Below are positions 2,230 to 45,181 of a stretch of DNA of 64,000 nt, in pieces (position 1 is the first letter of the stretch; every line of letters begins with the position of its first letter). The position numbers and the translations under genes are program-made. The stretch lies in sequence record NC_070882.1; one strand, 5' to 3'. The notes under the pieces are model-generated. The model was not told the origin of the DNA. It ran no database searches and worked only from the letters and a program-made list of their open reading frames with translations.

Positions 2230-4416
2230 CTATCGACCATAGAATCCACGAGAATGGATACTGCGGTCTTGTTGGAAGCGAGAAGTACGAACACGTCTGA
2301 CTCGATCGTCACGCACTTGTTTCAACATAGCGTCAATACCGACACCAGTTGTTTCTTCCATGTTAATACTCTTAGATAGATTACGGAGGCGCATTTCAAG
2401 TTTTGTGATTACGAATGGATTTGTCTCACCTTTGAGTTGAGCAATCAAATCTTCGAATTCTCCTTTATTTTGCTTCTCTTTATCTTCACGATATTTTTCT
2501 AGAGCAGTAAGCTCTACATCACGAGTAACAGCACGGGAGAAAATAGTCGCTGGGTTAATACCGTAGTAAGAAAGGTTTTGACCACGAATACATACCCAGT
2601 GAGCCAACAGCATGGAAATTACCATGTCGTCGTGGTTATCGCGGGTATGGTCAATCCGTCCATTCTTAATTGTCAAAGCCAGTAGTTCTGTAATCAGCGT
2701 CTTATCCGCCATTCTTCGACTACCATAATCCATGGCACTCGGTAGTGCTTCAAGGAACAAACTGTTACGAGAATACCGACCAGAACCGGAGGTATTGAAA
2801 CCAAAGTAACGTTTGAATCGATCGTAGAACGATGCAGGACGTTGAGACAACGGAGTCTGAATATCCCGAAACTCAGATTCTAGTACCGTATGCTCATCCA
2901 CGATTCTGTTAAAGATTCGCCGGAACGGATCTATACCAGCTTTGTGTAGTTGCATTACAACGAAGTCGATAAGTGCAGTACCCATCGATTTACGTTCAGG
3001 TACCCAAGTAATCGTTGAGTAACGGATTAATAGATTACCGATGAAAGCCGCAATGACAGGAACGGAAGTTTCATTATAACAACCAGCAGCCACTACCTCG
3101 TGTGTCTCCACATCAAATACAACCATGCCAGTGGCGTCGTTGTCAGACCCTAGAAGTTCACTGGGGTCCATTCCCATCATAAAACGACTTTCAGCCATTC
3201 TCTGATCAACTTCGTGTTTAGGAATGTACCAACGAATTGTATAACCGTCCGGTGTAATCTCTGTCCAGATTGGTTCACGCTCAGATGATTTCAATTGCTT
3301 TTTGTGTTCTGGTGATAATGGCGAACCTTCACCACCGACAGTCCAGATATTAAAGAAGTCTCGGTCAGCGATCTCGCCAAACGAACTAGATTCTTTAAGT
3401 TCCTGGAACAACCATTCATCTGTACGACCCAACTGGCGATGGTTAAAGGCTCCATAAATAATCGGCTTCTGATCGGCCTTGGATCCTTTCTCCATTACTA
3501 ACACTGCCATACGTTGGTTGACAAGATCAAACATCGTCTCAGACCAAGTGTGGCCACCAGTCATGAACTTATATGCGAACGCGCCGTCACGAGTGGTAAT
3601 GTTACCGGCAGTTGTTGTGAAGATGTTGCCGTATGGTTGGCCTTGACGCTTAGCTTCAGCACGTGCAGCAGAACCAGATGCCAGAGCAACAGGAAGAGAG
3701 ATCTCAATCAAGTTGATGTATGCAAATTCGTCGAACTGCATGATCGGTACAGTAAGACCACGACCAAGTTTGTCAGCAGCAATTTTATCGTTACGGCCAA
3801 CAGCTGTCTTGTATCGATTACCTAAACGAATACAGGTCATCAATTCATTGTTGTCTACATCGTTCGGGTTTGCCCAATGAATGTAATCGGGTAATAGATC
3901 TCGCATTACCTTAAGACGTTCAATGTTTGCTGTACGAAGTTTATTATCTTTAGTGATCAGGTTGATAGTGGTGTTCTCACCCCAGATATACATCATACCT
4001 GTCATCAAGATGTCAGTTGAAACAGATTTACCAGTCTGACGCGGTTGCAACAGACCAAAGTCTAGGTGGTTAAAAAAGCACCAGAAAAGTGCAATGTTAC
4101 CACGGTTAGCACGGAATGCGTTCGGAACGTTACCAGATGTCGCAGGGACTCGGGCAACTTCACGGAAGTAGTACCATGGATTGTATTTACATTCCAAGGC
4201 GATTTTCATTTTTGTTGCATCATCTAGATCGGGGTCATAGGGATCTACCCCCTGAAGATCTGGTTGAAGCAACGCTAGAATGAATTTCCAGTTTGCTATT
4301 TTAAGCTCATCTCTATAAAGAGCTGCTAATTTTAAGAATGTTTTATTTGACGTTTTTGTATCCGCTATCGCTGTTGGGAACTTCTCCCAATCATCGCGGA
4401 ATAAAATAAGTTCCAT
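2230..4416 (-). CDS. terL: Terminase large subunit (phiKZ gp25-like)
   Basis: Walker A QPRQTGKS, Walker B IMQFDE, C-terminal RNase H-like nuclease motifs (MGMDPS, HDDMVISMLL); 728 aa. Confidence 0.93.
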   Translation of the reverse strand: MELILFRDDWEKFPTAIADTKTSNKTFLKLAALYRDELKIANWKFILALLQPDLQGVDPYDPDLDDATKMKIALECKYNPWYYFREVARVPATSGNVPNAFRANRGNIALFWCFFNHLDFGLLQPRQTGKSVSTDILMTGMMYIWGENTTINLITKDNKLRTANIERLKVMRDLLPDYIHWANPNDVDNNELMTCIRLGNRYKTAVGRNDKIAADKLGRGLTVPIMQFDEFAYINLIEISLPVALASGSAARAEAKRQGQPYGNIFTTTAGNITTRDGAFAYKFMTGGHTWSETMFDLVNQRMAVLVMEKGSKADQKPIIYGAFNHRQLGRTDEWLFQELKESSSFGEIADRDFFNIWTVGGEGSPLSPEHKKQLKSSEREPIWTEITPDGYTIRWYIPKHEVDQRMAESRFMMGMDPSELLGSDNDATGMVVFDVETHEVVAAGCYNETSVPVIAAFIGNLLIRYSTITWVPERKSMGTALIDFVVMQLHKAGIDPFRRIFNRIVDEHTVLESEFRDIQTPLSQRPASFYDRFKRYFGFNTSGSGRYSRNSLFLEALPSAMDYGSRRMADKTLITELLALTIKNGRIDHTRDNHDDMVISMLLAHWVCIRGQNLSYYGINPATIFSRAVTRDVELTALEKYREDKEKQNKGEFEDLIAQLKGETNPFVITKLEMRLRNLSKSINMEETTGVGIDAMLKQVRDDRVRRVRTSRFQQDRSIHSRGFYGR

Positions 4417-4468
4417 GACCGTTTCCTTAAAGAAACAAAAGGTTCATACCTTTAGGGTTAATTTACGA

Positions 4469-4502: not shown

Positions 4503-5153
4503 CTAGATTAACTCTAGTACCGGGCGCCAACCATAACCAGTGTTAGGTTGAGATGGTGCGTTCTGCCCCCATCCAGTTACGCCATTTGGTCCACCACGTA
4601 AGACTTTGAACCTAGGAGACCCTGTATTACCATTAGTAGGTGTCCATGTCCAAATACCGAGGTTACTTGGATGTACAAACCCAAGATCCTCATTACTTAA
4701 GTTCTCCCAAAATGTTCCAGTTGGATCATTTGCCGATACACGGTACATCAACTGACCCCACTCCGAGTTAGCTGGAGATCCACTGGCACCACCAGACAGA
4801 TAAACTATCTTACAATCAATATCCTTTACTTTTGACGTATTAGTATTAAAGCTATTGATAGCTGCTTCTAATTGATTAAAAGCCATTGAATGTCGAATAG
4901 TTTTAGTAGCAACTAAAAGCTTCCTGTCGTTTAAAGAGAACATTAACCAATCTACATCTGTTTGATCTGGCATTCGTGTTCCATATGGATTACCAGAAAA
5001 ACCATGTACATCGTTCATTTGTTCAGCGCCAATAAAATCGGCAGCTGTGACTATACCGTAATAACCTAGACTTGAATCACCAGCTATTAGTTCGGTAGGT
5101 AAAACACTTGGTTTAGCTCTTTTAGAGTTGACCGACAATAAAATTTCAATCAT
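4503..5153 (-). CDS. Putative virion structural protein (jumbo-phage multigene family)
   Basis: N-terminal IAGDSSLGYYG and C-terminal GWRPVLELI typical of phiKZ-like virion paralogues; lies in the late-strand cluster. Confidence 0.6.
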   Translation of the reverse strand: MIEILLSVNSKRAKPSVLPTELIAGDSSLGYYGIVTAADFIGAEQMNDVHGFSGNPYGTRMPDQTDVDWLMFSLNDRKLLVATKTIRHSMAFNQLEAAINSFNTNTSKVKDIDCKIVYLSGGASGSPANSEWGQLMYRVSANDPTGTFWENLSNEDLGFVHPSNLGIWTWTPTNGNTGSPRFKVLRGGPNGVTGWGQNAPSQPNTGYGWRPVLELI

Positions 5154-15140: not shown

Positions 15141-15174
15141 CATAAGCCCTCTCCTTCGGGAGAGGGCATTTATG
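15141..15174. terminator. Bidirectional terminator
   Basis: CATAAGCCCTCTCC-ttcg-GGAGAGGGCATTTATG followed by a T-run; between convergent genes. Confidence 0.85.
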
Positions 15175-18130: not shown

Positions 18131-18517
18131 ATGTTAGAGATTGGTGAAATTCGACATGAAGTAATTGGTGAGTTCATAAAGGTCGAGAGGACACATGTTG
18201 TCCTCCCTGACTATCTTGAATCTCTTCTCGATTACGAGGGTAATATACGAACGTTGTTAACCAGTAAAGCTTTCGCTTGCACTAGGAAAGCCTATGGTAT
18301 TTGGTTTGATGGTGATTTGCGTGGTTATGCTATTCTCTATACACCGGAGATGCATTTGGACTGTCTGTATATAGCAGAGTCAGCCCAAGGTATGGGGTAT
18401 GGTGAACAGCTAGTACGATACATTCAAGCCAAGAAAGTTTTTGTACACAAAAAGAATGAAGCAGCTATAGCGCTTTATAAGAAAATTGGTTTAGTCATTG
18501 AGTTTGATGACGAATAA
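18131..18517 (+). CDS. GNAT-family acetyltransferase
   Basis: Motif A LYIAESAQGMGYG and motif B NEAAIALYKKIG. Confidence 0.85.
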   Translation: MLEIGEIRHEVIGEFIKVERTHVVLPDYLESLLDYEGNIRTLLTSKAFACTRKAYGIWFDGDLRGYAILYTPEMHLDCLYIAESAQGMGYGEQLVRYIQAKKVFVHKKNEAAIALYKKIGLVIEFDDE

Positions 18518-18625
18518 ATACTGAGATCCAGTATTTAATACAGGTTAGATTTCCCTGTTGTCTATTTTGCATGAACGTTGCAAACGTTTTTTTGCATTCC
18601 GCAAAGACAACATAAAGGTGAAATC

Positions 18626-40805: not shown

Positions 40806-40816
40806 GAAAAGAAATA

Positions 40817-40884
40817 CTGGGGCTAGTTATTTAATACAGGAAATGACCGTGAGGTCCTGACCTGCTATTTGAGCTATGCCCCAG
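40817..40884 (+). other. 68-nt extended hairpin with GNRA loop upstream of the chmA promoter
   Basis: CTGGGGC/GCCCCAG, TAGTT/AGCTA, CAGG/CCTG, GACC-gtga-GGTC. Confidence 0.55.
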
Positions 40885-41095: not shown

Positions 41096-42961
41096 ATGAT
41101 TCGTGATACCGAAACTCAAAACACTCAAGCTCAAGCCAACAACGCTCCGGCTCAAGCTACTCCGCGCGCACAACAGGAAGCTCCTCGTATGCAACAAGCT
41201 GCACCTCAAGCTCTGCAAGGCGGTATTTCCGGCCTGCCGAACATGTTCAAACGTTCCGGTCGTACTGATGGCGGCGACGCCCGTGCGAGCGAAGCGCTGC
41301 AAGTAATGACCCGCGTTGGCAAAGATGCCATCGACCATCAAGACCTGGAAAACGATTTCCAGATTCTGCGTTTCGACCGTGATGCCAACCGTGTTGGCTA
41401 CTCCGCGCTGCTGATCGTCAAGCACGCTGCTGGTGGTAACGGTATCATCGTAGTTCGTCCGCTGATCATGCCGAACCCGGCAATCACCCTGCCTCCGCGT
41501 CAGGTTACCATTCAGAACGGCATGAGCCACGATCGCTTCGATGTAGACGTCGAAGTACAAGACGTATTCACCGTTCAGTACTGGAACCGCATCTGCGAAT
41601 TCGTTCGTCAGACCACCGGTCGTCCGAAGGCTGAAGTACACCCGGCTGGCCCGCTGCCGATCCCGGCTGAATTCGATCTGAAAGACGAAGTCCTGCTGAA
41701 AGACATTCTGATCCGTTCCGTCAACCTGTGTGACGACGTTCTGGCTAAGAAAGCTGGCGAGACTCCGTTCCAGATCGCAATGCTGCGCGGCCAAGATGAA
41801 ACCCTGGCTGCCAAGATGGACTTCTCCGGTCGTCCGGTAATGGACAGCGTCGGTAACCCGATCAAGTCCGATATCGTGATCAGCCTGAACCGTACCAAGA
41901 AACAAGGTCAACAAGAGAACGAGTTCTACGAAGCAGACACCATGCTGAACCAGGTGTCGGTACAAGTAACCCTGGAGTACACCCCCACTCCGCAAGCCCA
42001 GATGTTCGGTCAACAGACCCAACCGCTGCCGCCGTTCTCCCCGGCGATCCTGGTAACCGACATTCGTCAGGCCAACTGGATCAAGGCAAACACTCTGGAA
42101 CTGTACCTCTTCGCTCTGTCGAACGCCTTCCGCGTAACCGCTGGCCAGGCTTGGGCTCGTAAGTTCCTGCCTCAAGTTGGTAAAGTTAAAGACCTGGGTG
42201 ACATCGGTGCTCTGGGTTGGCTGTCCAACCTGGGTAAGAAGATCGATACCAAGTCCGATACCTTCACCGATCAGAACTTCGCTGATCTGATGCTGAGCAT
42301 GGTTCGTCCGAACCCGTCCTTCCTGATCGATCTGGATCGCATGGGCGACAACGCAGCACTGGACGTAATCTTCCTGGATGCCATGGGTGGCCCGAACCAA
42401 CAGAAAGCTACTGCCGCGATCATTCGCGCTGTACAGAACCTGGTTGGTGGTGGCTTCGAGCGCTTCTTCGACTTCAACACTCAGCCGATCATTGCATCGA
42501 CTGGCACTGAAGTGAACAAGGGCTACTACTGGGATGGCGACGAGAAACGTGACCGTCGTGACCTGGATGCACTGGGTGCACTGAACGCTGCTGAGGGCAA
42601 CCAACAAGAGTGGATGTCCTGGTACGGTACTCAATGCAACCCGAACATCCATCCGGAACTGCGTAACAAGCAATCCAAGAACTACGACCGTGCGTTCCTG
42701 GGTGCTGTAACCTACACCACTCGTGCACATCGTGGTATCTTCAACCCGAAGTTCATCGAGGGTCTGGATAAGGCGATTGCTGCTGCTGGTCTGACTGTAG
42801 CAATGGACAACGTTGCACAGGTCTTCGGTGCTCAGCGCTTCGTTGGCAACACCATGATCCAAGACTTCGCTGTCGGTTCTACCGCACAGGTTGTCAACGG
42901 CATGGGCGTTGGTGGCGGCTACCAGATGAACATGGTAGGTTCGGTTGGTACTCTGTACTAA
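41096..42961 (+). CDS. chmA: Chimallin, major phage-nucleus shell protein
   Basis: 621 aa with a disordered Gln-rich N-terminus; FKRSGR, RFDRD, YYWDGDEKRDRRDLD motifs; immediately upstream of nvRNAP beta'; strong codon bias. Confidence 0.95.
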   Translation: MIRDTETQNTQAQANNAPAQATPRAQQEAPRMQQAAPQALQGGISGLPNMFKRSGRTDGGDARASEALQVMTRVGKDAIDHQDLENDFQILRFDRDANRVGYSALLIVKHAAGGNGIIVVRPLIMPNPAITLPPRQVTIQNGMSHDRFDVDVEVQDVFTVQYWNRICEFVRQTTGRPKAEVHPAGPLPIPAEFDLKDEVLLKDILIRSVNLCDDVLAKKAGETPFQIAMLRGQDETLAAKMDFSGRPVMDSVGNPIKSDIVISLNRTKKQGQQENEFYEADTMLNQVSVQVTLEYTPTPQAQMFGQQTQPLPPFSPAILVTDIRQANWIKANTLELYLFALSNAFRVTAGQAWARKFLPQVGKVKDLGDIGALGWLSNLGKKIDTKSDTFTDQNFADLMLSMVRPNPSFLIDLDRMGDNAALDVIFLDAMGGPNQQKATAAIIRAVQNLVGGGFERFFDFNTQPIIASTGTEVNKGYYWDGDEKRDRRDLDALGALNAAEGNQQEWMSWYGTQCNPNIHPELRNKQSKNYDRAFLGAVTYTTRAHRGIFNPKFIEGLDKAIAAAGLTVAMDNVAQVFGAQRFVGNTMIQDFAVGSTAQVVNGMGVGGGYQMNMVGSVGTLY

Positions 42962-43328
42962 GAAACAACTCCCCCGGTTGATAGGGGTGTCAGAAGGCTG
43001 GCATCCCGATTCAAATACTGCGACCCTGGTTCACTTCGGTGATAACGGTTAGGAGTAGGTTCCGCGAAGTAATCGACTAGTGGGCGTAAAGTCTAGGTCG
43101 ACCTCTCGCTACACGGGTCGTGAGTGATCACTTAACCGAAAGGAGTTACTCTTGGGTAACGTGTGATCAAACAACGATGGATGGTAAAAGGTCCTAGTGC
43201 CAGAGTGCTACAGAGAAGAGCGGAGGTTAAGCTTTGTAGACGACGCTAGATCGTGCCAGGCTCCGTTGGTGGTCCATCGATAGTAGATAAGGCGGCTCCT
43301 TCGGGAGCCGCTTCTATCTCCTTTTTTT
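42962..43328 (+). ncRNA. Candidate structured ncRNA or 3'-UTR RNA domain downstream of chmA
   Basis: No ORF. At least seven nested helices, cUUCGg and GAAA tetraloops, ending in a terminator. Confidence 0.6.
43290..43328 (+). terminator. Intrinsic terminator after chmA and the candidate ncRNA
   Basis: GCGGCTCC-ttcg-GGAGCCGC, then T7. Confidence 0.85.
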
Positions 43329-43352
43329 GTCGAGACATAATAGGAAGTAGGT

Positions 43353-44612
43353 ATGGGTCTATATGCTCAGGTTGTCAATCATGACGAGATGCTCGCTAAC
43401 CAAAGAGGTAAAGTAGTATTCGCTAACGACTTTAATACCAGCAATGCTGAACAAAAGGAGGAATTCCAACGTTATCTGTTCTCCCATTATCAGGATGCAG
43501 ATGCGATCGAGAACTCAGCTTCGTGTGACTGTGAGCATATCACAGAAGCATACAAGCTTGGGGTAATCTGCGATAACTGCGGTACACCAGTAGTAAGCAC
43601 GAGCAACCGACCCATCGTCCCATCGATGTGGATTCGGGCACCGGAAGGGGTGGATCGTCTGGTGAGTCCCGAGTTGTGGATTATGCTTTCAGGTTATATG
43701 TCGATGAAAGAATTCGACTTCCTGGAGTATCTGACCAACACCCAGTATCAGTACGATTACGATACGATCAGTTCGAAGGAAACAAAACGGAAACTTGACA
43801 AGTTACTGGCTCGCCAGTTCCCGCGTGGACTGAACAACTTCGTTCAGAACTTCGATACGATCTTCCAGTTCTTGCTCGATAGCAGTATCATCAATACCAA
43901 CAAAGGTGAGATGGCTGCATTCGTTAACCAGAATAAAGAACATCTGTTCCCGAAGAACATTCCGATCCCAACTAAACTCTGCTTCGTTGTAGAGTCTACG
44001 ACCTCGGGTGTTTACATCGATAAGCCGATCGGCGCAGCAATCGATGCGGTACTGACTATTAGTAGTATCGGTAGTTCGGCAATTCCGCTGAAACCAATCA
44101 CTGTACAAAACCGTGTAGCTCGTGCACTGAAGCTTCTAGCTATCTTCCACGAGAACTACGACAAACAACGAATTGCACAGAAACCCGGTTTGGTTCGTCG
44201 ACATGTACTAGGTGGTCGTCTTAACCTGACTGCACGTGCAGTAATTACTTCTATCAGTGATCCGCATGATTACGATGAACTTCACATTCCGTGGGGTGTC
44301 GGTTGTCAGCTGTTGAAGTATCATCTGATCAACAAGCTCAAACGCAAATTCCGTATGACGACTCGCCAAGCGAACTCGTTCATTTACGAGAACGTTCTGA
44401 AGTACAACGAAGTCATCGATCAACTGTTCAAAGAGATCATCGCGGAATCGAAGTATAAGGGTCTTCCTTGTGTATTCCACCGCAACCCGACTCTGCAACG
44501 TGGTTCGACTCAACAGTTCTTCATCACCGTTATCAAGAATGACATTCGCGATAACTCGATCAGCATGTCGGTCCTCTGTCTTAAAGCTCCTAATGCGGAT
44601 TTCGACGGAGAT
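43353..44612 (+). CDS. nvRNAP beta' N-terminal/catalytic subunit, exon 1 (phiKZ gp55-like)
   Basis: Zn-finger CDC...CDNC, RAVI, HRNPTL and catalytic PNADFDGD ending at 44612. Confidence 0.93.
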
Positions 44613-44974
44613 TTTAATTGGTCTCCTAACCTTCTTAATTGCTGGAACCTCCTTAGAGCCTAACTACCAAAGCGGGGTCCGAAAGGACGAACGTAACGGT
44701 TTGAAAAGTGTTAGGATTGGACAATCAGCAGCGAAGCTTCTACATATTACCGTGAGGTAAGATATGAAGAACGTTCAACGACTATCGAAACCGCTGCGAA
44801 AGCAGATAAGGGAGTAGAGTAGGATCAAGTGATCCGAAATAGAAGGCTTCCCCATAGGGAAGAAGATATAGTCTCACCATCTAGTGAAAGCTAGAGCAGT
44901 TACTTAATGTCGAGAGATATTAAGTGGACGGTACAGCTGCGACATGTCGCTAACGAAGCTGTACGAAGAATGTG
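44613..44974 (+). mobile_element. Group I self-splicing intron, 362 nt, no endonuclease ORF
   Basis: P1 GGAGAU/GUCUCC with a U.G pair at the splice site; P AAUUGCUGGAA (44637), Q AAUCAGCAG (44723), R GUUCAACGACUAU (44773), S AAGAUAUAGUCU (44863); terminal G44974. Splicing restores ...DFDGD|QLNLTL in frame. Confidence 0.93.
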
Positions 44975-45181
44975 CAACTTAACTTAACGTTGATGCCCGA
45001 TAACTATCTGGCTGATGCAACTGAACGAATCGCTCCGCATACTTGGGTACTGAGTCCTGATGATCCGCATGAGATCTCGGGTAACTTGGAACTACAAGGT
45101 CCGGTAGTAGAGACCATCATCAACTATGCTCACGAGGACTATCTTCCGTCCTTGGAAGAATGGTTGGCGAAAGCAGCTTAA
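44975..45181 (+). CDS. nvRNAP beta' subunit, exon 2
   Basis: QLNLTLMPD continues the DFDGD motif; spliced product 488 aa. Confidence 0.9.
   Translation, partial: QLNLTLMPDNYLADATERIAPHTWVLSPDDPHEISGNLELQGPVVETIINYAHEDYLPSLEEWLAKAA

What the first reader, a model, noticed from the sequence alone, without database searches (positions are those of the whole stretch)
42962..43328. Large multi-domain structured RNA directly downstream of chimallin
Seen: 367 nt without an ORF, folding by hand into nested domains. (i) CCCC/GGGG hairpin 42968-42990. (ii) CGACCC 43021-26 with GGGTCG 43115-20, enclosing TCAC-uucg-GTGA (43031-42), a bulged helix 43050-60/43101-11 and CGAC-TAG/CTA-GTCG (43074-43100). 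(iii) A three-way junction closed by TGATCAC/GTGATCA (43125-31/43163-69) with CC-gaaa-GG and GTTACT/GGTAAC arms. (iv) CGATGGA/TCCATCG (43175-81/43273-79), enclosing CTAGTG/CGCTAG and the 8-bp CTACAGAG/CTTTGTAG. (v) A UUCG terminator. The G.U wobbles and stable tetraloops point to selection on RNA structure. It would be co-transcribed with one of the most abundant early mRNAs. Inference: an uncharacterised ncRNA or 3' domain, for example a stability element, a localisation signal for shell assembly or mRNA export, or a ligand for ChmC. I do not recognise an Rfam family.
Basis: partly seen in the sequence, partly recalled or inferred. Interest (0 to 1): 0.85.

Follow-up and report, generated by a model that had tools for sequence, protein, structure and literature searches.

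The report
Modular structured RNA downstream of chimallin
The 367 bases after the nuclear-shell (chimallin) gene of this phiKZ-like Pseudomonas jumbo phage encode a real, conserved, three-module folded RNA. It matches no catalogued RNA family, is better conserved than the essential genes beside it, and its function is unknown.

Summary
The window is Pseudomonas phage PS119XW. The stretch 42962-43328 lies between chmA and the nvRNAP beta' gene and holds no conserved ORF.

Comparative analysis supports a structured RNA on the + strand, made of:
- a four-helix 5' domain (42972-43118);
- a small three-way junction (43125-43169);
- a 3' three-way-junction domain (43175-43279) with a probable loop-loop pseudoknot;
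- the phage's usual UUCG-hairpin terminator.

In the 3' domain, 17 of 36 pairs show compensatory changes across five lineages, while the loops never vary. The modules occur separately. Uncultivated Psa21-like phages carry only the 3' domain. PhiPA3 carries the 5' domain and junction. D6 and Noxifer carry none.

PS119XW and phiKZ are 84-92% identical here, against 58-65% in the flanking genes. No Rfam family matches. No tRNA or tmRNA was found, and no copy in cellular genomes.

A published ChmC eCLIP study noted unexplained peaks in the homologous PhiPA3 gap. My best reading is a protein-binding 3' tail of the abundant chmA mRNA. The main rival is control of read-through into beta'. The function remains untested.

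The parts
41096..42961 (+). chmA (chimallin, nuclear shell protein); the element is its 3' tail
   Evidence: Pfam PF25677 Chimallin_Phikzvirus, 1101.6 bits over 1-621. RefSeq annotates it as 'nuclear shell protein'.
42972..43118 (+). 5' domain: P1 closes a four-way junction of P2/P2a, P3 and P4.
- P1: CCCG 42973-76 with CGGG 43114-17.
- P2: UUGA 42978-81 with UCAA 43011-14.
- P2a: 42984-93 with 42998-43007.
- P3: UACU 43016-19 with AGUA 43054-57; CGACC 43021-25 with GGUUaG 43047-52; UCAC-UUCG-GUGA 43031-42.
- P4: GCGAAG 43064-69 with CUcUCGC 43103-09; UCGACU 43073-78 with GGUCGA 43096-101.
- Conserved junction strands: GGUUCC 43058-63 and UACA 43110-13.
   Evidence: RNAalifold on 7 sequences. 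Compensatory changes in P1, P2, P2a and P4. Strands checked by script in PS119XW, phiKZ and PhiPA3. Covariance model R2 finds PhiPA3 at E = 4.7e-8 and nothing else.
43125..43169 (+). Middle three-way junction.
- Closing helix: GAUCAC 43126-31 with GUGAUC 43163-68.
- Arm 1: CC-GAAA-GG, 43136-43.
- Arm 2: GUUACU 43145-50 with GGUAAC 43155-60.
   Evidence: Compensatory changes: GUUGC/GCAAC in HPP-Temi, AACCAC/GUGGUU and GUC/GAC in PhiPA3, U-A to U-G in SL2, PA7 and T2P.
43175..43279 (+). 3' domain: a three-way junction.
- Outer helix: 43175-82 with 43272-79.
- Long arm: mid helix 43190-99 with 43244-52, then inner helix 43208-15 with 43232-39.
- Invariant 16-nt apical loop AAGAGCGGAGGUUAAG, 43216-31.
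- Short arm: GCCAG 43255-59 with UUGGU 43266-70.
- Invariant junction strand GGUAAA, 43183-88.
- Invariant 3' side of the internal loop between the mid and inner helices: ACGA, 43240-43.
   Evidence: 17 of 36 pairs changed on both sides. The outer helix has 6 of 8 such pairs, the mid helix 5 of 10, and the inner helix 6 of 9 (counting one extra candidate pair in the internal loop). The domain occurs alone after chmA in L066, L074 and L089. Model R1 scores 116-133 bits.
43221..43265 (+). Probable loop-loop pseudoknot: CGGAG 43221-25 with CUCCG 43261-65.
   Evidence: Perfect 5-bp complementarity that never varies in all 8 sequences, while all three flanking stems have turned over. With no variation there is no covariation proof; this is an inference.
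43286..43328 (+). Terminator.
- Extended stem: GAUAAGGCGGCUCC 43286-99 with GGAGCCGCUUCUAUC 43304-18.
- Loop: UUCG 43300-03.
- Then UCC and U7, 43322-28.
   Evidence: Stem pair probabilities are at least 0.98. The same design occurs at 15152, 18989 and 21030 in the window, and after chmA in every relative read. The simple scanner did not call it, because the U-run starts 3 nt after the stem.
43353..44612 (+). nvRNAP beta' N-terminal subunit, exon 1. This is the downstream gene, reached by reading through the terminator.
   Evidence: Pfam RNA_pol_Rpb1_2. tblastn with PhiPA3 gp054 matches residues 1-420 at 84.5% identity.

Best explanation
This is a genuine, conserved, modular structured RNA that forms the 3' untranslated tail of the chimallin mRNA. 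It is also the spacer in front of the nvRNAP beta' gene.

**Shown here.**
- Three independently folding modules plus a standard phage terminator.
- + strand polarity.
- Covariation in nearly every helix, with invariant loops and junctions.
- A patchy, module-by-module distribution among phiKZ-like Pseudomonas phages.
- No relative in Rfam or in cellular genomes.

**Inferred.**
- It is transcribed from the chmA promoters and most transcripts stop at the UUCG hairpin and U7.
- It would therefore be made in amounts equal to one of the most abundant early mRNAs. Being compact and capped by the terminator hairpin, it may persist as a nuclease-resistant 3' fragment.

**Proposed mechanism.** Each module is a binding platform for a protein, presented through its invariant loops. 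The nucleus-associated RNA-binding protein ChmC is the best current candidate. Binding would affect the fate of chmA mRNA or form a separate RNP. This last step is the weakest.
For: **Structure.**
- 98.8% of cells paired, 7 compensatory pairs, slid controls at most 1.
- 17 of 36 compensatory pairs, 0 of 500 shuffles as good.
- the comparative fold equals the MFE for phiKZ.

**Strand.** G-U pairs that would be A-C on the other strand are fixed at five positions of the 3' domain. The fold z-score favours the + strand.

**Co-transcription.**
- P1 pairs 42973-76 with 43114-17 and covaries (C-G in PS119XW, U-A in phiKZ and PhiPA3), so the RNA must start upstream of 42972.
- No terminator-like site lies on the + strand between the chmA stop codon and 43286.
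- Wicke 2020 places PHIKZ054 in a six-gene operon with an early and a middle start site.

**Constraint.** PS119XW against phiKZ is 92.5% identical in P3-P4 and 84% in the 3' domain. The figures are 58.4% for chmA and 64.8% for beta'.

**Modularity.**
- 3' domain alone in L066, L074 and L089.
- 5' domain and junction only in PhiPA3.

**Expression and partner.** ChmC eCLIP peaks lie in the homologous PhiPA3 gap (PMC11077065).
Against: - No transcript data for PS119XW or phiKZ were available here. The 5' and 3' ends and any stable fragment are inferred.
- The eCLIP evidence comes from PhiPA3, which lacks the 3' domain. ChmC showed little sequence specificity in that study.
- D6 and Noxifer keep the same gene order and terminator with only about 85 nt between the genes, so the element is accessory.
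- The pseudoknot rests on invariant bases only.
- For PS119XW alone, the nearest-neighbour MFE is 15 kcal/mol below the comparative fold and uses a non-conserved helix.
- Part of the extreme conservation at 43008-43045 could reflect a DNA-level signal (AAATACTG) rather than RNA.
Confidence: 0.55

Rival explanations
1. Read-through control. The 3' domain, or the whole element, acts in cis on the terminator right after it. It would work as a riboswitch-like sensor or a put-like antitermination RNA, and would set how much transcription continues from chmA into the essential beta' gene and the rest of the operon.
For: - In all four lineages the 3' domain ends 6-8 nt before the extended terminator stem.
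- The terminator lies 25 nt before the beta' start codon.
- In 201phi2-1 no promoter was found for the beta' gene gp107. The nearest early promoter is about 3 kb upstream, which I take to be the chmA promoter (PMC11512511).
- phiKZ gp54 heads a six-gene operon.
- Invariant junction and loop bases with fully turned-over stems is the usual signature of an aptamer.
Against: - The terminator hairpin forms with probability at least 0.98, and I found no conserved competing pairing.
- Relatives with the same terminator and gene order manage without the element.
- The idea does not explain the 5' domain or the middle junction.
- The 3' domain sits in a 3' UTR, 12 nt after a stop codon in L066. That is unusual for a riboswitch.
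Confidence: 0.2
2. A separate short transcript. An internal middle-class promoter around 43013 (AAATACTG) starts an RNA at about 43040 that ends at the terminator. This would resemble the short 5'-UTR species described for phiKZ and 201phi2-1.
For: - AAATACTG occurs only three times on the + strand of the 64-kb window. The other two sit in clear promoter contexts (40812 upstream of chmA, and 18516). phiKZ has the same motif upstream of gp54.
- Putzeys 2024 reports 42 terminators inside 5' UTRs across the six phages studied.
- The block 43008-43113 is 92.5% identical to phiKZ, more than base pairing alone would require.
Against: - The second half of the motif (TATTTAATACAGG, 9 nt downstream) is absent here.
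- phiKZ has TAATACTG, and in PhiPA3 the TACT is displaced.
- A start at about 43040 would cut off P1, P2, P2a and half of P3. Those helices covary, so they must exist as RNA.
Confidence: 0.1
3. An exchangeable accessory cassette. The modules are horizontally traded RNA genes parked in a permissive, highly expressed spot. Their role lies outside chmA and beta' biology, for example as a decoy against a host RNA-binding defence or factor.
For: - The distribution is patchy even among close Psa21-like relatives.
- The history is discordant. The flanking genes of PS119XW are closer to PhiPA3 (66.5% and 74.5%) than to phiKZ (58.4% and 64.8%), yet the element is 83% identical to phiKZ.
- SL2-type phiKZ relatives carry the PS119XW-type mid helix.
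Against: - No recombinase, endonuclease or repeat flanks it.
- No similarity to any known decoy or antitoxin RNA in Rfam.
- Its position is strictly fixed between chmA and the terminator.
- Strong purifying selection could explain the same pattern.
Confidence: 0.1
4. No function: a long non-coding gap that happens to fold, or short unannotated ORFs.
For: - Some deposited genomes annotate small ORFs here (HPP-Temi and Bobae).
- The single-sequence z-score is only -2.74.
Against: - Covariation in nearly all helices.
- Conservation above that of the flanking essential genes.
- The annotated ORFs differ in strand and position between genomes, and the indels are not multiples of three.
Confidence: 0.02

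Closest known systems
Unannotated ChmC eCLIP peaks between chmA (gp53) and gp54 of PhiPA3 (Enustun et al. 2024, NAR, PMC11077065)
   Same: It is the same genomic gap in a related phage. PhiPA3 shares the 5' domain, the middle junction and the terminator. The peaks show that this RNA is abundant and cross-links to ChmC.
   Different: That paper gives no structure, boundaries or family and simply suggests 'small regulatory RNAs'. PhiPA3 lacks the 3' domain and has a 150-nt insertion in P4.
UTR-derived phage ncRNA candidates of phiKZ and 201phi2-1 (Gerovac 2021 PMC8545117; Putzeys 2024 PMC10914365; PMC11512511)
   Same: They are non-coding species that share a promoter or terminator with a neighbouring mRNA in the same group of phages.
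   Different: Those candidates are 75-250 nt and lie at other loci (gp40 5' UTR, PHIKZ298 3' UTR, PHIKZ221 and PHIKZ302 5' UTRs, gp182 upstream). None of the papers read mentions the gp54-gp55 gap. This element is larger, multi-domain and supported by covariation.
Transcription-terminating riboswitches
   Same: A compact junction fold with invariant junction and loop bases and a loop-loop contact, as in purine aptamers, placed directly before an intrinsic terminator and a gene.
   Different: No competing antiterminator pairing was found. It lies in the 3' UTR of the upstream gene. No ligand is known and no Rfam aptamer matches.
3'-UTR-derived bacterial sRNAs (reviewed in PMC9438474)
   Same: It would share its terminator and 3' end with a parent mRNA and could accumulate as the stable 3' portion.
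   Different: Those sRNAs are short, Hfq-dependent and act through a linear seed. This is a roughly 330-nt multi-domain fold. Processing is untested.
Flavivirus 3'-UTR xrRNA/sfRNA (analogy only)
   Same: A viral 3' UTR built from modular three-way junctions with pseudoknots. The modules are duplicated or lost between relatives and yield a stable non-coding 3' fragment.
   Different: xrRNAs stall a 5'-to-3' exonuclease. From general knowledge, Pseudomonas has no such enzyme. There is no sequence or fold relation.
Large phage-associated structured RNAs in Rfam (GOLLD, ROOL, HEARO)
   Same: Large, complex folds of unknown function that are often phage-borne.
   Different: No match to any Rfam model at E <= 10. 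This element is much smaller and confined to one clade of Pseudomonas jumbo phages.

Membership tests
Any Rfam 15 family | Covariance-model score at or near the family threshold | tested here: not met
   The gathering scan of the window found only the group I intron at 44591-44896. The E <= 10 scan of 42800-43500 found only two weak terminator-like matches (E = 0.92 and 1.4). No hit at E <= 1 in the homologous gaps of 7 loci.
Group I intron | Conserved P3-P8 core recognised by RF00028 | tested here: not met
   No RF00028 hit in 42800-43500 even at E <= 10, while the true intron 1.3 kb downstream scores 75.7 bits.
Group I intron | Interrupts a gene whose exons join in frame | tested here: not met
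   It lies between the complete chmA ORF (Pfam match 1-621 of 621) and the start codon of beta'.
Terminator-type riboswitch | Conserved aptamer fold with covariation and invariant core | tested here: met
   3' domain: 17 of 36 compensatory pairs, invariant junction and loops.
Terminator-type riboswitch | Expression platform with mutually exclusive terminator and antiterminator pairings | tested here: not met
   Terminator pair probabilities are 0.98-1.0 in the full-length ensemble. By eye I found no alternative pairing conserved in both PS119XW and L066.
Terminator-type riboswitch | Binds a specific ligand | not testable with these tools
   Needs in-line probing or ITC.
Intrinsic terminator | G+C-rich hairpin followed by a U-run | tested here: met
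   A 14-bp stem with a UUCG loop, then UCC and U7. The design recurs at three other gene ends in the window. The strict scanner missed it because of the 3-nt spacer. 3' ends were not measured.
phiKZ-type middle promoter | A-rich + TACT element about 22 nt upstream of the start site (Wicke 2020). Here it appears as AAATACTG-N9-TATTTAATACAGG. | tested here: inconclusive
   The first half is present at 43013. The second half is absent.
tRNA / tmRNA | Cloverleaf or tRNA-like domain detectable by ARAGORN | tested here: not met
   0 genes in 42800-43500.
3'-UTR-derived sRNA | Shares the terminator and 3' end with the parent mRNA | tested here: met
   No terminator-like site lies between the chmA stop codon and 43286. 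P1 spans 42973-43117.
3'-UTR-derived sRNA | A discrete processed or primary species that accumulates | not testable with these tools
   The only indirect evidence is eCLIP coverage peaks in PhiPA3.

The most novel reading that the evidence does not exclude
The element would be a new class of jumbo-phage regulatory RNA that works with the phage's own transcription and nucleus machinery.

One version: the invariant-loop 3' domain is an aptamer for a phage protein or metabolite. It would set read-through from chmA into the nvRNAP beta' operon and so couple shell production to polymerase supply.

Another version: the single-stranded AAAUACUG, which matches the middle-promoter core, makes the RNA a 6S-like decoy for the still unidentified middle-promoter recognition factor.
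Probability: 0.15. Interest if true: 0.85.

Novelty: new variant of a known kind. Interest (0 to 1): 0.62.

Why it matters
phiKZ and PhiPA3 are the model systems for the phage nucleus, and chmA is their most studied gene. This non-coding stretch between chmA and an essential RNA polymerase gene is better conserved than either gene, yet it is not annotated as an RNA in any record read here.

The work gives a defined structure with module boundaries, invariant loops and a candidate pseudoknot. That turns an unexplained eCLIP peak into testable mutants.

It also shows that the chmA 3' end is a hot spot where different folded RNA modules have been gained and lost. This bears on three things:
- how these phages set the chmA to beta' expression ratio;
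- what ChmC recognises;
- the design of Cas13 or antisense tools aimed at chmA mRNA.

Tried and rejected
- **Rfam.** Gathering and E <= 10 scans of the window, and an E <= 1 scan of 7 homologous loci, gave nothing for the element.
- **ARAGORN.** No tRNA or tmRNA.
- **Coding.** The ORFs are short, inconsistent between genomes and broken by 1- and 2-nt indels.
- **Degenerate intron or repeat of the nearby group I intron.** No similarity beyond 12-mers. Those 12-mers are other terminators.
- **Second copies.** Model R1 and nhmmer found none in the 64-kb window.
- **More homologues.**
  - Two 5'-domain motif scans of IMG/VR returned only PA7 and PhiPA3 plus chance hits.
  - The 3'-domain loop pattern found L066, L074 and L089. 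The 72 metagenome and 51 genome-contig matches were otherwise chance. Most of these loci were re-scored with R1 and the rest with nhmmer only; the best R1 score was 17.4 bits at E = 0.14.
- **PhiPA3 and model R2.** R2 aligned only the 5' half of PhiPA3 correctly, because of its 150-nt P4 insertion. PhiPA3 helices were therefore checked by script instead.
- **K-turn in the 3'-domain internal loop.** Rejected, because the would-be G.A position is A in four lineages.
- **Antiterminator pairing between the apical loop and the terminator 3' arm.** Seven to eight base pairs are possible in two lineages. I judged this a by-product of similar arm sequences and not competitive with the hairpin.
- **Early promoter overlapping the terminator.** The match is poor and would leave no leader.
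- **Supplementary TSS and TTS tables.** Those of the three transcriptome papers are not held. Ceyssens 2014 could not be read.

Full report
**Identity of the window**

The sequence is Pseudomonas phage vB_PaeM_PS119XW (Pawinskivirus), and window coordinates equal genome coordinates. The ORF at 41096-42961 is chimallin (Pfam PF25677, 1101.6 bits). The ORF at 43353 is the N-terminal beta' subunit of the non-virion RNA polymerase. The finding covers the whole gap between them.

- The gap has no ORF longer than 43 codons. The few short ones are not conserved.
- The + strand folds better than shuffles (z = -2.74, 0 of 100 shuffles as good). The - strand gives z = -1.54.
- The decisive evidence is comparative. 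blastn found the stretch in 57 phage genomes, all from Pseudomonas: 8 PS119XW-like at 95% identity or more, and 49 phiKZ-like at 80-90%.
- The ChmA proteins of PS119XW and phiKZ are only 48% identical.
- By segment, PS119XW against phiKZ is 92.5% identical over 43008-43113, 84% over the 3' domain and 85% over the terminator. The figures are 58.4% for chmA and 64.8% for beta' at the DNA level.

**Structure**

RNAalifold on seven sequences gave a consensus that I trimmed of spurious A/U-run pairs. On that alignment 98.8% of cells pair and seven pairs changed on both sides. Versions with the partner slid by 1-3 columns give 0-1 such pairs.

The 5' domain has this layout:
- P1 (CCCG 42973-76 with CGGG 43114-17) closes a four-way junction.
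- P2/P2a ends in the hairpin GGGGUGUCAG/CUGGCAUCCC.
- P3 is capped by UCAC-UUCG-GUGA.
- P4 is capped by UCGACU...GGUCGA.
- The junction strands GGUUCC and UACA are conserved.

PhiPA3 keeps this architecture with different sequences:
- P2a becomes GGGGUGUACG/CGUACAUCCC.
- P3 becomes UUAGGC...CUC-GAAA-GAG...GCCUAG.
- P4 becomes GUGGUAGC/GCUAUCAC around a 150-nt insertion.
- The middle junction becomes AACCAC/GUGGUU.

For phiKZ the comparative fold is exactly its MFE. phiKZ and PhiPA3 cannot form that helix.

**The 3' domain**

nhmmer and a loop-pattern search found this domain alone, starting about a dozen bases after the chmA stop codon in L066 and L089 and after one extra hairpin in L074. Two are uncultivated jumbo-phage contigs (L066, L074) and one is a metagenome contig (L089). 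For L066 and L074, ChmA is 44-45% identical to that of PS119XW, and all three have Psa21-type terminators.

- Across eight sequences all three stems have been rewritten. The outer helix has 6 of 8 pairs with compensatory change, the mid helix 5 of 10, and the inner helix 6 of 9.
- The junction strand GGUAAA never varies, nor does the ACGA side of the internal loop.
- The apical loop AAGAGCGGAGGUUAAG is constant across its GAGCGGAGG core, and the short hairpin CCAGGCUCCGUUGGUGG never varies.
- CGGAG in the apical loop is complementary to CUCCG in the short hairpin loop. I propose a loop-loop pseudoknot, but invariance means it has no covariation proof.
- Fixed G-U pairs place the RNA on the + strand.
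- Model R1 found no other copy in the window or in 34 other loci. It also found none among the metagenome and genome-contig pattern matches that I re-scored with it.

**Distribution**

The gap between chmA and beta' ranges from about 50 to 515 nt among 26 IMG/VR loci and the isolates.
- D6 and Noxifer have about 85 nt, holding just the terminator.
- Psa21 has 435 nt of unrelated sequence.
- 201phi2-1-like phages carry a different hairpin with a conserved loop.

The modules are therefore accessory and separable. The flanking genes of PS119XW are closer to PhiPA3, but the element is closer to phiKZ. SL2-type phiKZ relatives share the PS119XW version of the mid helix. This points to exchange between co-infecting P. 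aeruginosa phages, to very strong constraint, or to both.

**Transcription context (inferred)**

- No + strand terminator-like site lies between the chmA stop codon and 43286.
- P1 spans 42973-43117 and covaries, so the functional RNA starts upstream of 42972, that is, within a chmA transcript.
- The hairpin at 43286-43318 plus U7 has the same design as three other gene-end terminators in the window. A similar hairpin and T-run follows chmA in every relative I read.
- Literature:
  - PHIKZ054 has an early and a middle start site and heads a six-gene operon (PMC8244752).
  - In 201phi2-1 no promoter was found for the beta' gene (PMC11512511).
  - So beta' is probably expressed by read-through.

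**Function**

None of the transcriptome or Grad-seq papers I could read describes an RNA here. Enustun et al. [quoted passage not shown]

I therefore favour a protein-binding 3' tail, or a 3'-derived stable RNA, of the chmA message, with ChmC as the first candidate partner (confidence 0.55 for the whole statement; the structural part alone is near certain).

The main rival is control of terminator read-through into beta' (0.2). It is attractive because the 3' domain always abuts the terminator. It is weakened because the hairpin is predicted to form at probability 0.98 or higher, no competing pairing is conserved, and relatives manage without the element.

An internal middle-type promoter (AAATACTG at 43013) is possible. 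It lacks the second half of the motif and would truncate covarying helices.

**Comparison with known families**

No Rfam family matches, and no tRNA or tmRNA was found. It is not an intron. It resembles a riboswitch aptamer in its conservation pattern and a 3'-UTR-derived sRNA in its position, but it fails or cannot be tested on their other defining features.

**Verdict**

This is a real, previously undescribed structured RNA family, restricted to phiKZ-like Pseudomonas phages. Its function is unknown.

Noticed in passing
window 44613-44974 (Rfam hit 44591-44896): The nvRNAP beta'-N gene is split by an ORF-less group I intron. PhiPA3 gp054 residues 1-420 map to 43353-44612 and residues 421-488 to 44975-45178. 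RefSeq annotates the two exons as separate hypothetical proteins, gp055 and gp056. In phiKZ the HNH endonuclease gene gp56 lies at the corresponding place, just upstream of the matching group I ribozyme hit.
   Followed up: partly
window 40812-40845 and 18516-18545; phiKZ L002 about 1855-1885: A shared motif, AAATACTG-N9-TATTTAATACAGG, lies upstream of chmA and of another gene. It is probably the middle-class promoter. Its two halves form an inverted repeat (AAATACTG...CAGTATTT at 18516).
   Followed up: partly
window 15152, 18989, 21030, 43297: Four + strand gene-end terminators share a CUCC-UUCG-GGAG hairpin top, a roughly 10-nt tail that extends the stem, and then a T-run. The simple terminator scanner missed the one copy that lay in the stretch it scanned (43297).
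   Followed up: partly
L004 about 4822-4858 (201phi2-1), L006 about 4812-4853 (Viktualia), L058, L059: Serwervirus-like phages carry a different module in the same gap: a hairpin whose 8-11 bp stem covaries and whose 18-20 nt loop, (A/G)CCUAAAU(A/G)CUGGNUAAA, is conserved. It shares AAAUACUG with PS119XW 43013-20 and with the middle-promoter core.
   Followed up: partly
L007 4795-5229 (Psa21); L061, L062, L063; L074 4861-4935: Other relatives fill the gap between the chmA stop codon and the terminator with unrelated, hairpin-rich sequence of 90-435 nt. The chmA 3' end looks like a general hot spot for folded RNA modules.
   Followed up: no
window 43314-43349; phiKZ L002 about 4385-4420: The terminator tail CUCCU is complementary to the beta' Shine-Dalgarno sequence AGGAG in phiKZ. 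The match is only partial to AGGAAG in PS119XW, and the Psa21-like phages have no CUCC. It is probably a coincidence.
   Followed up: no
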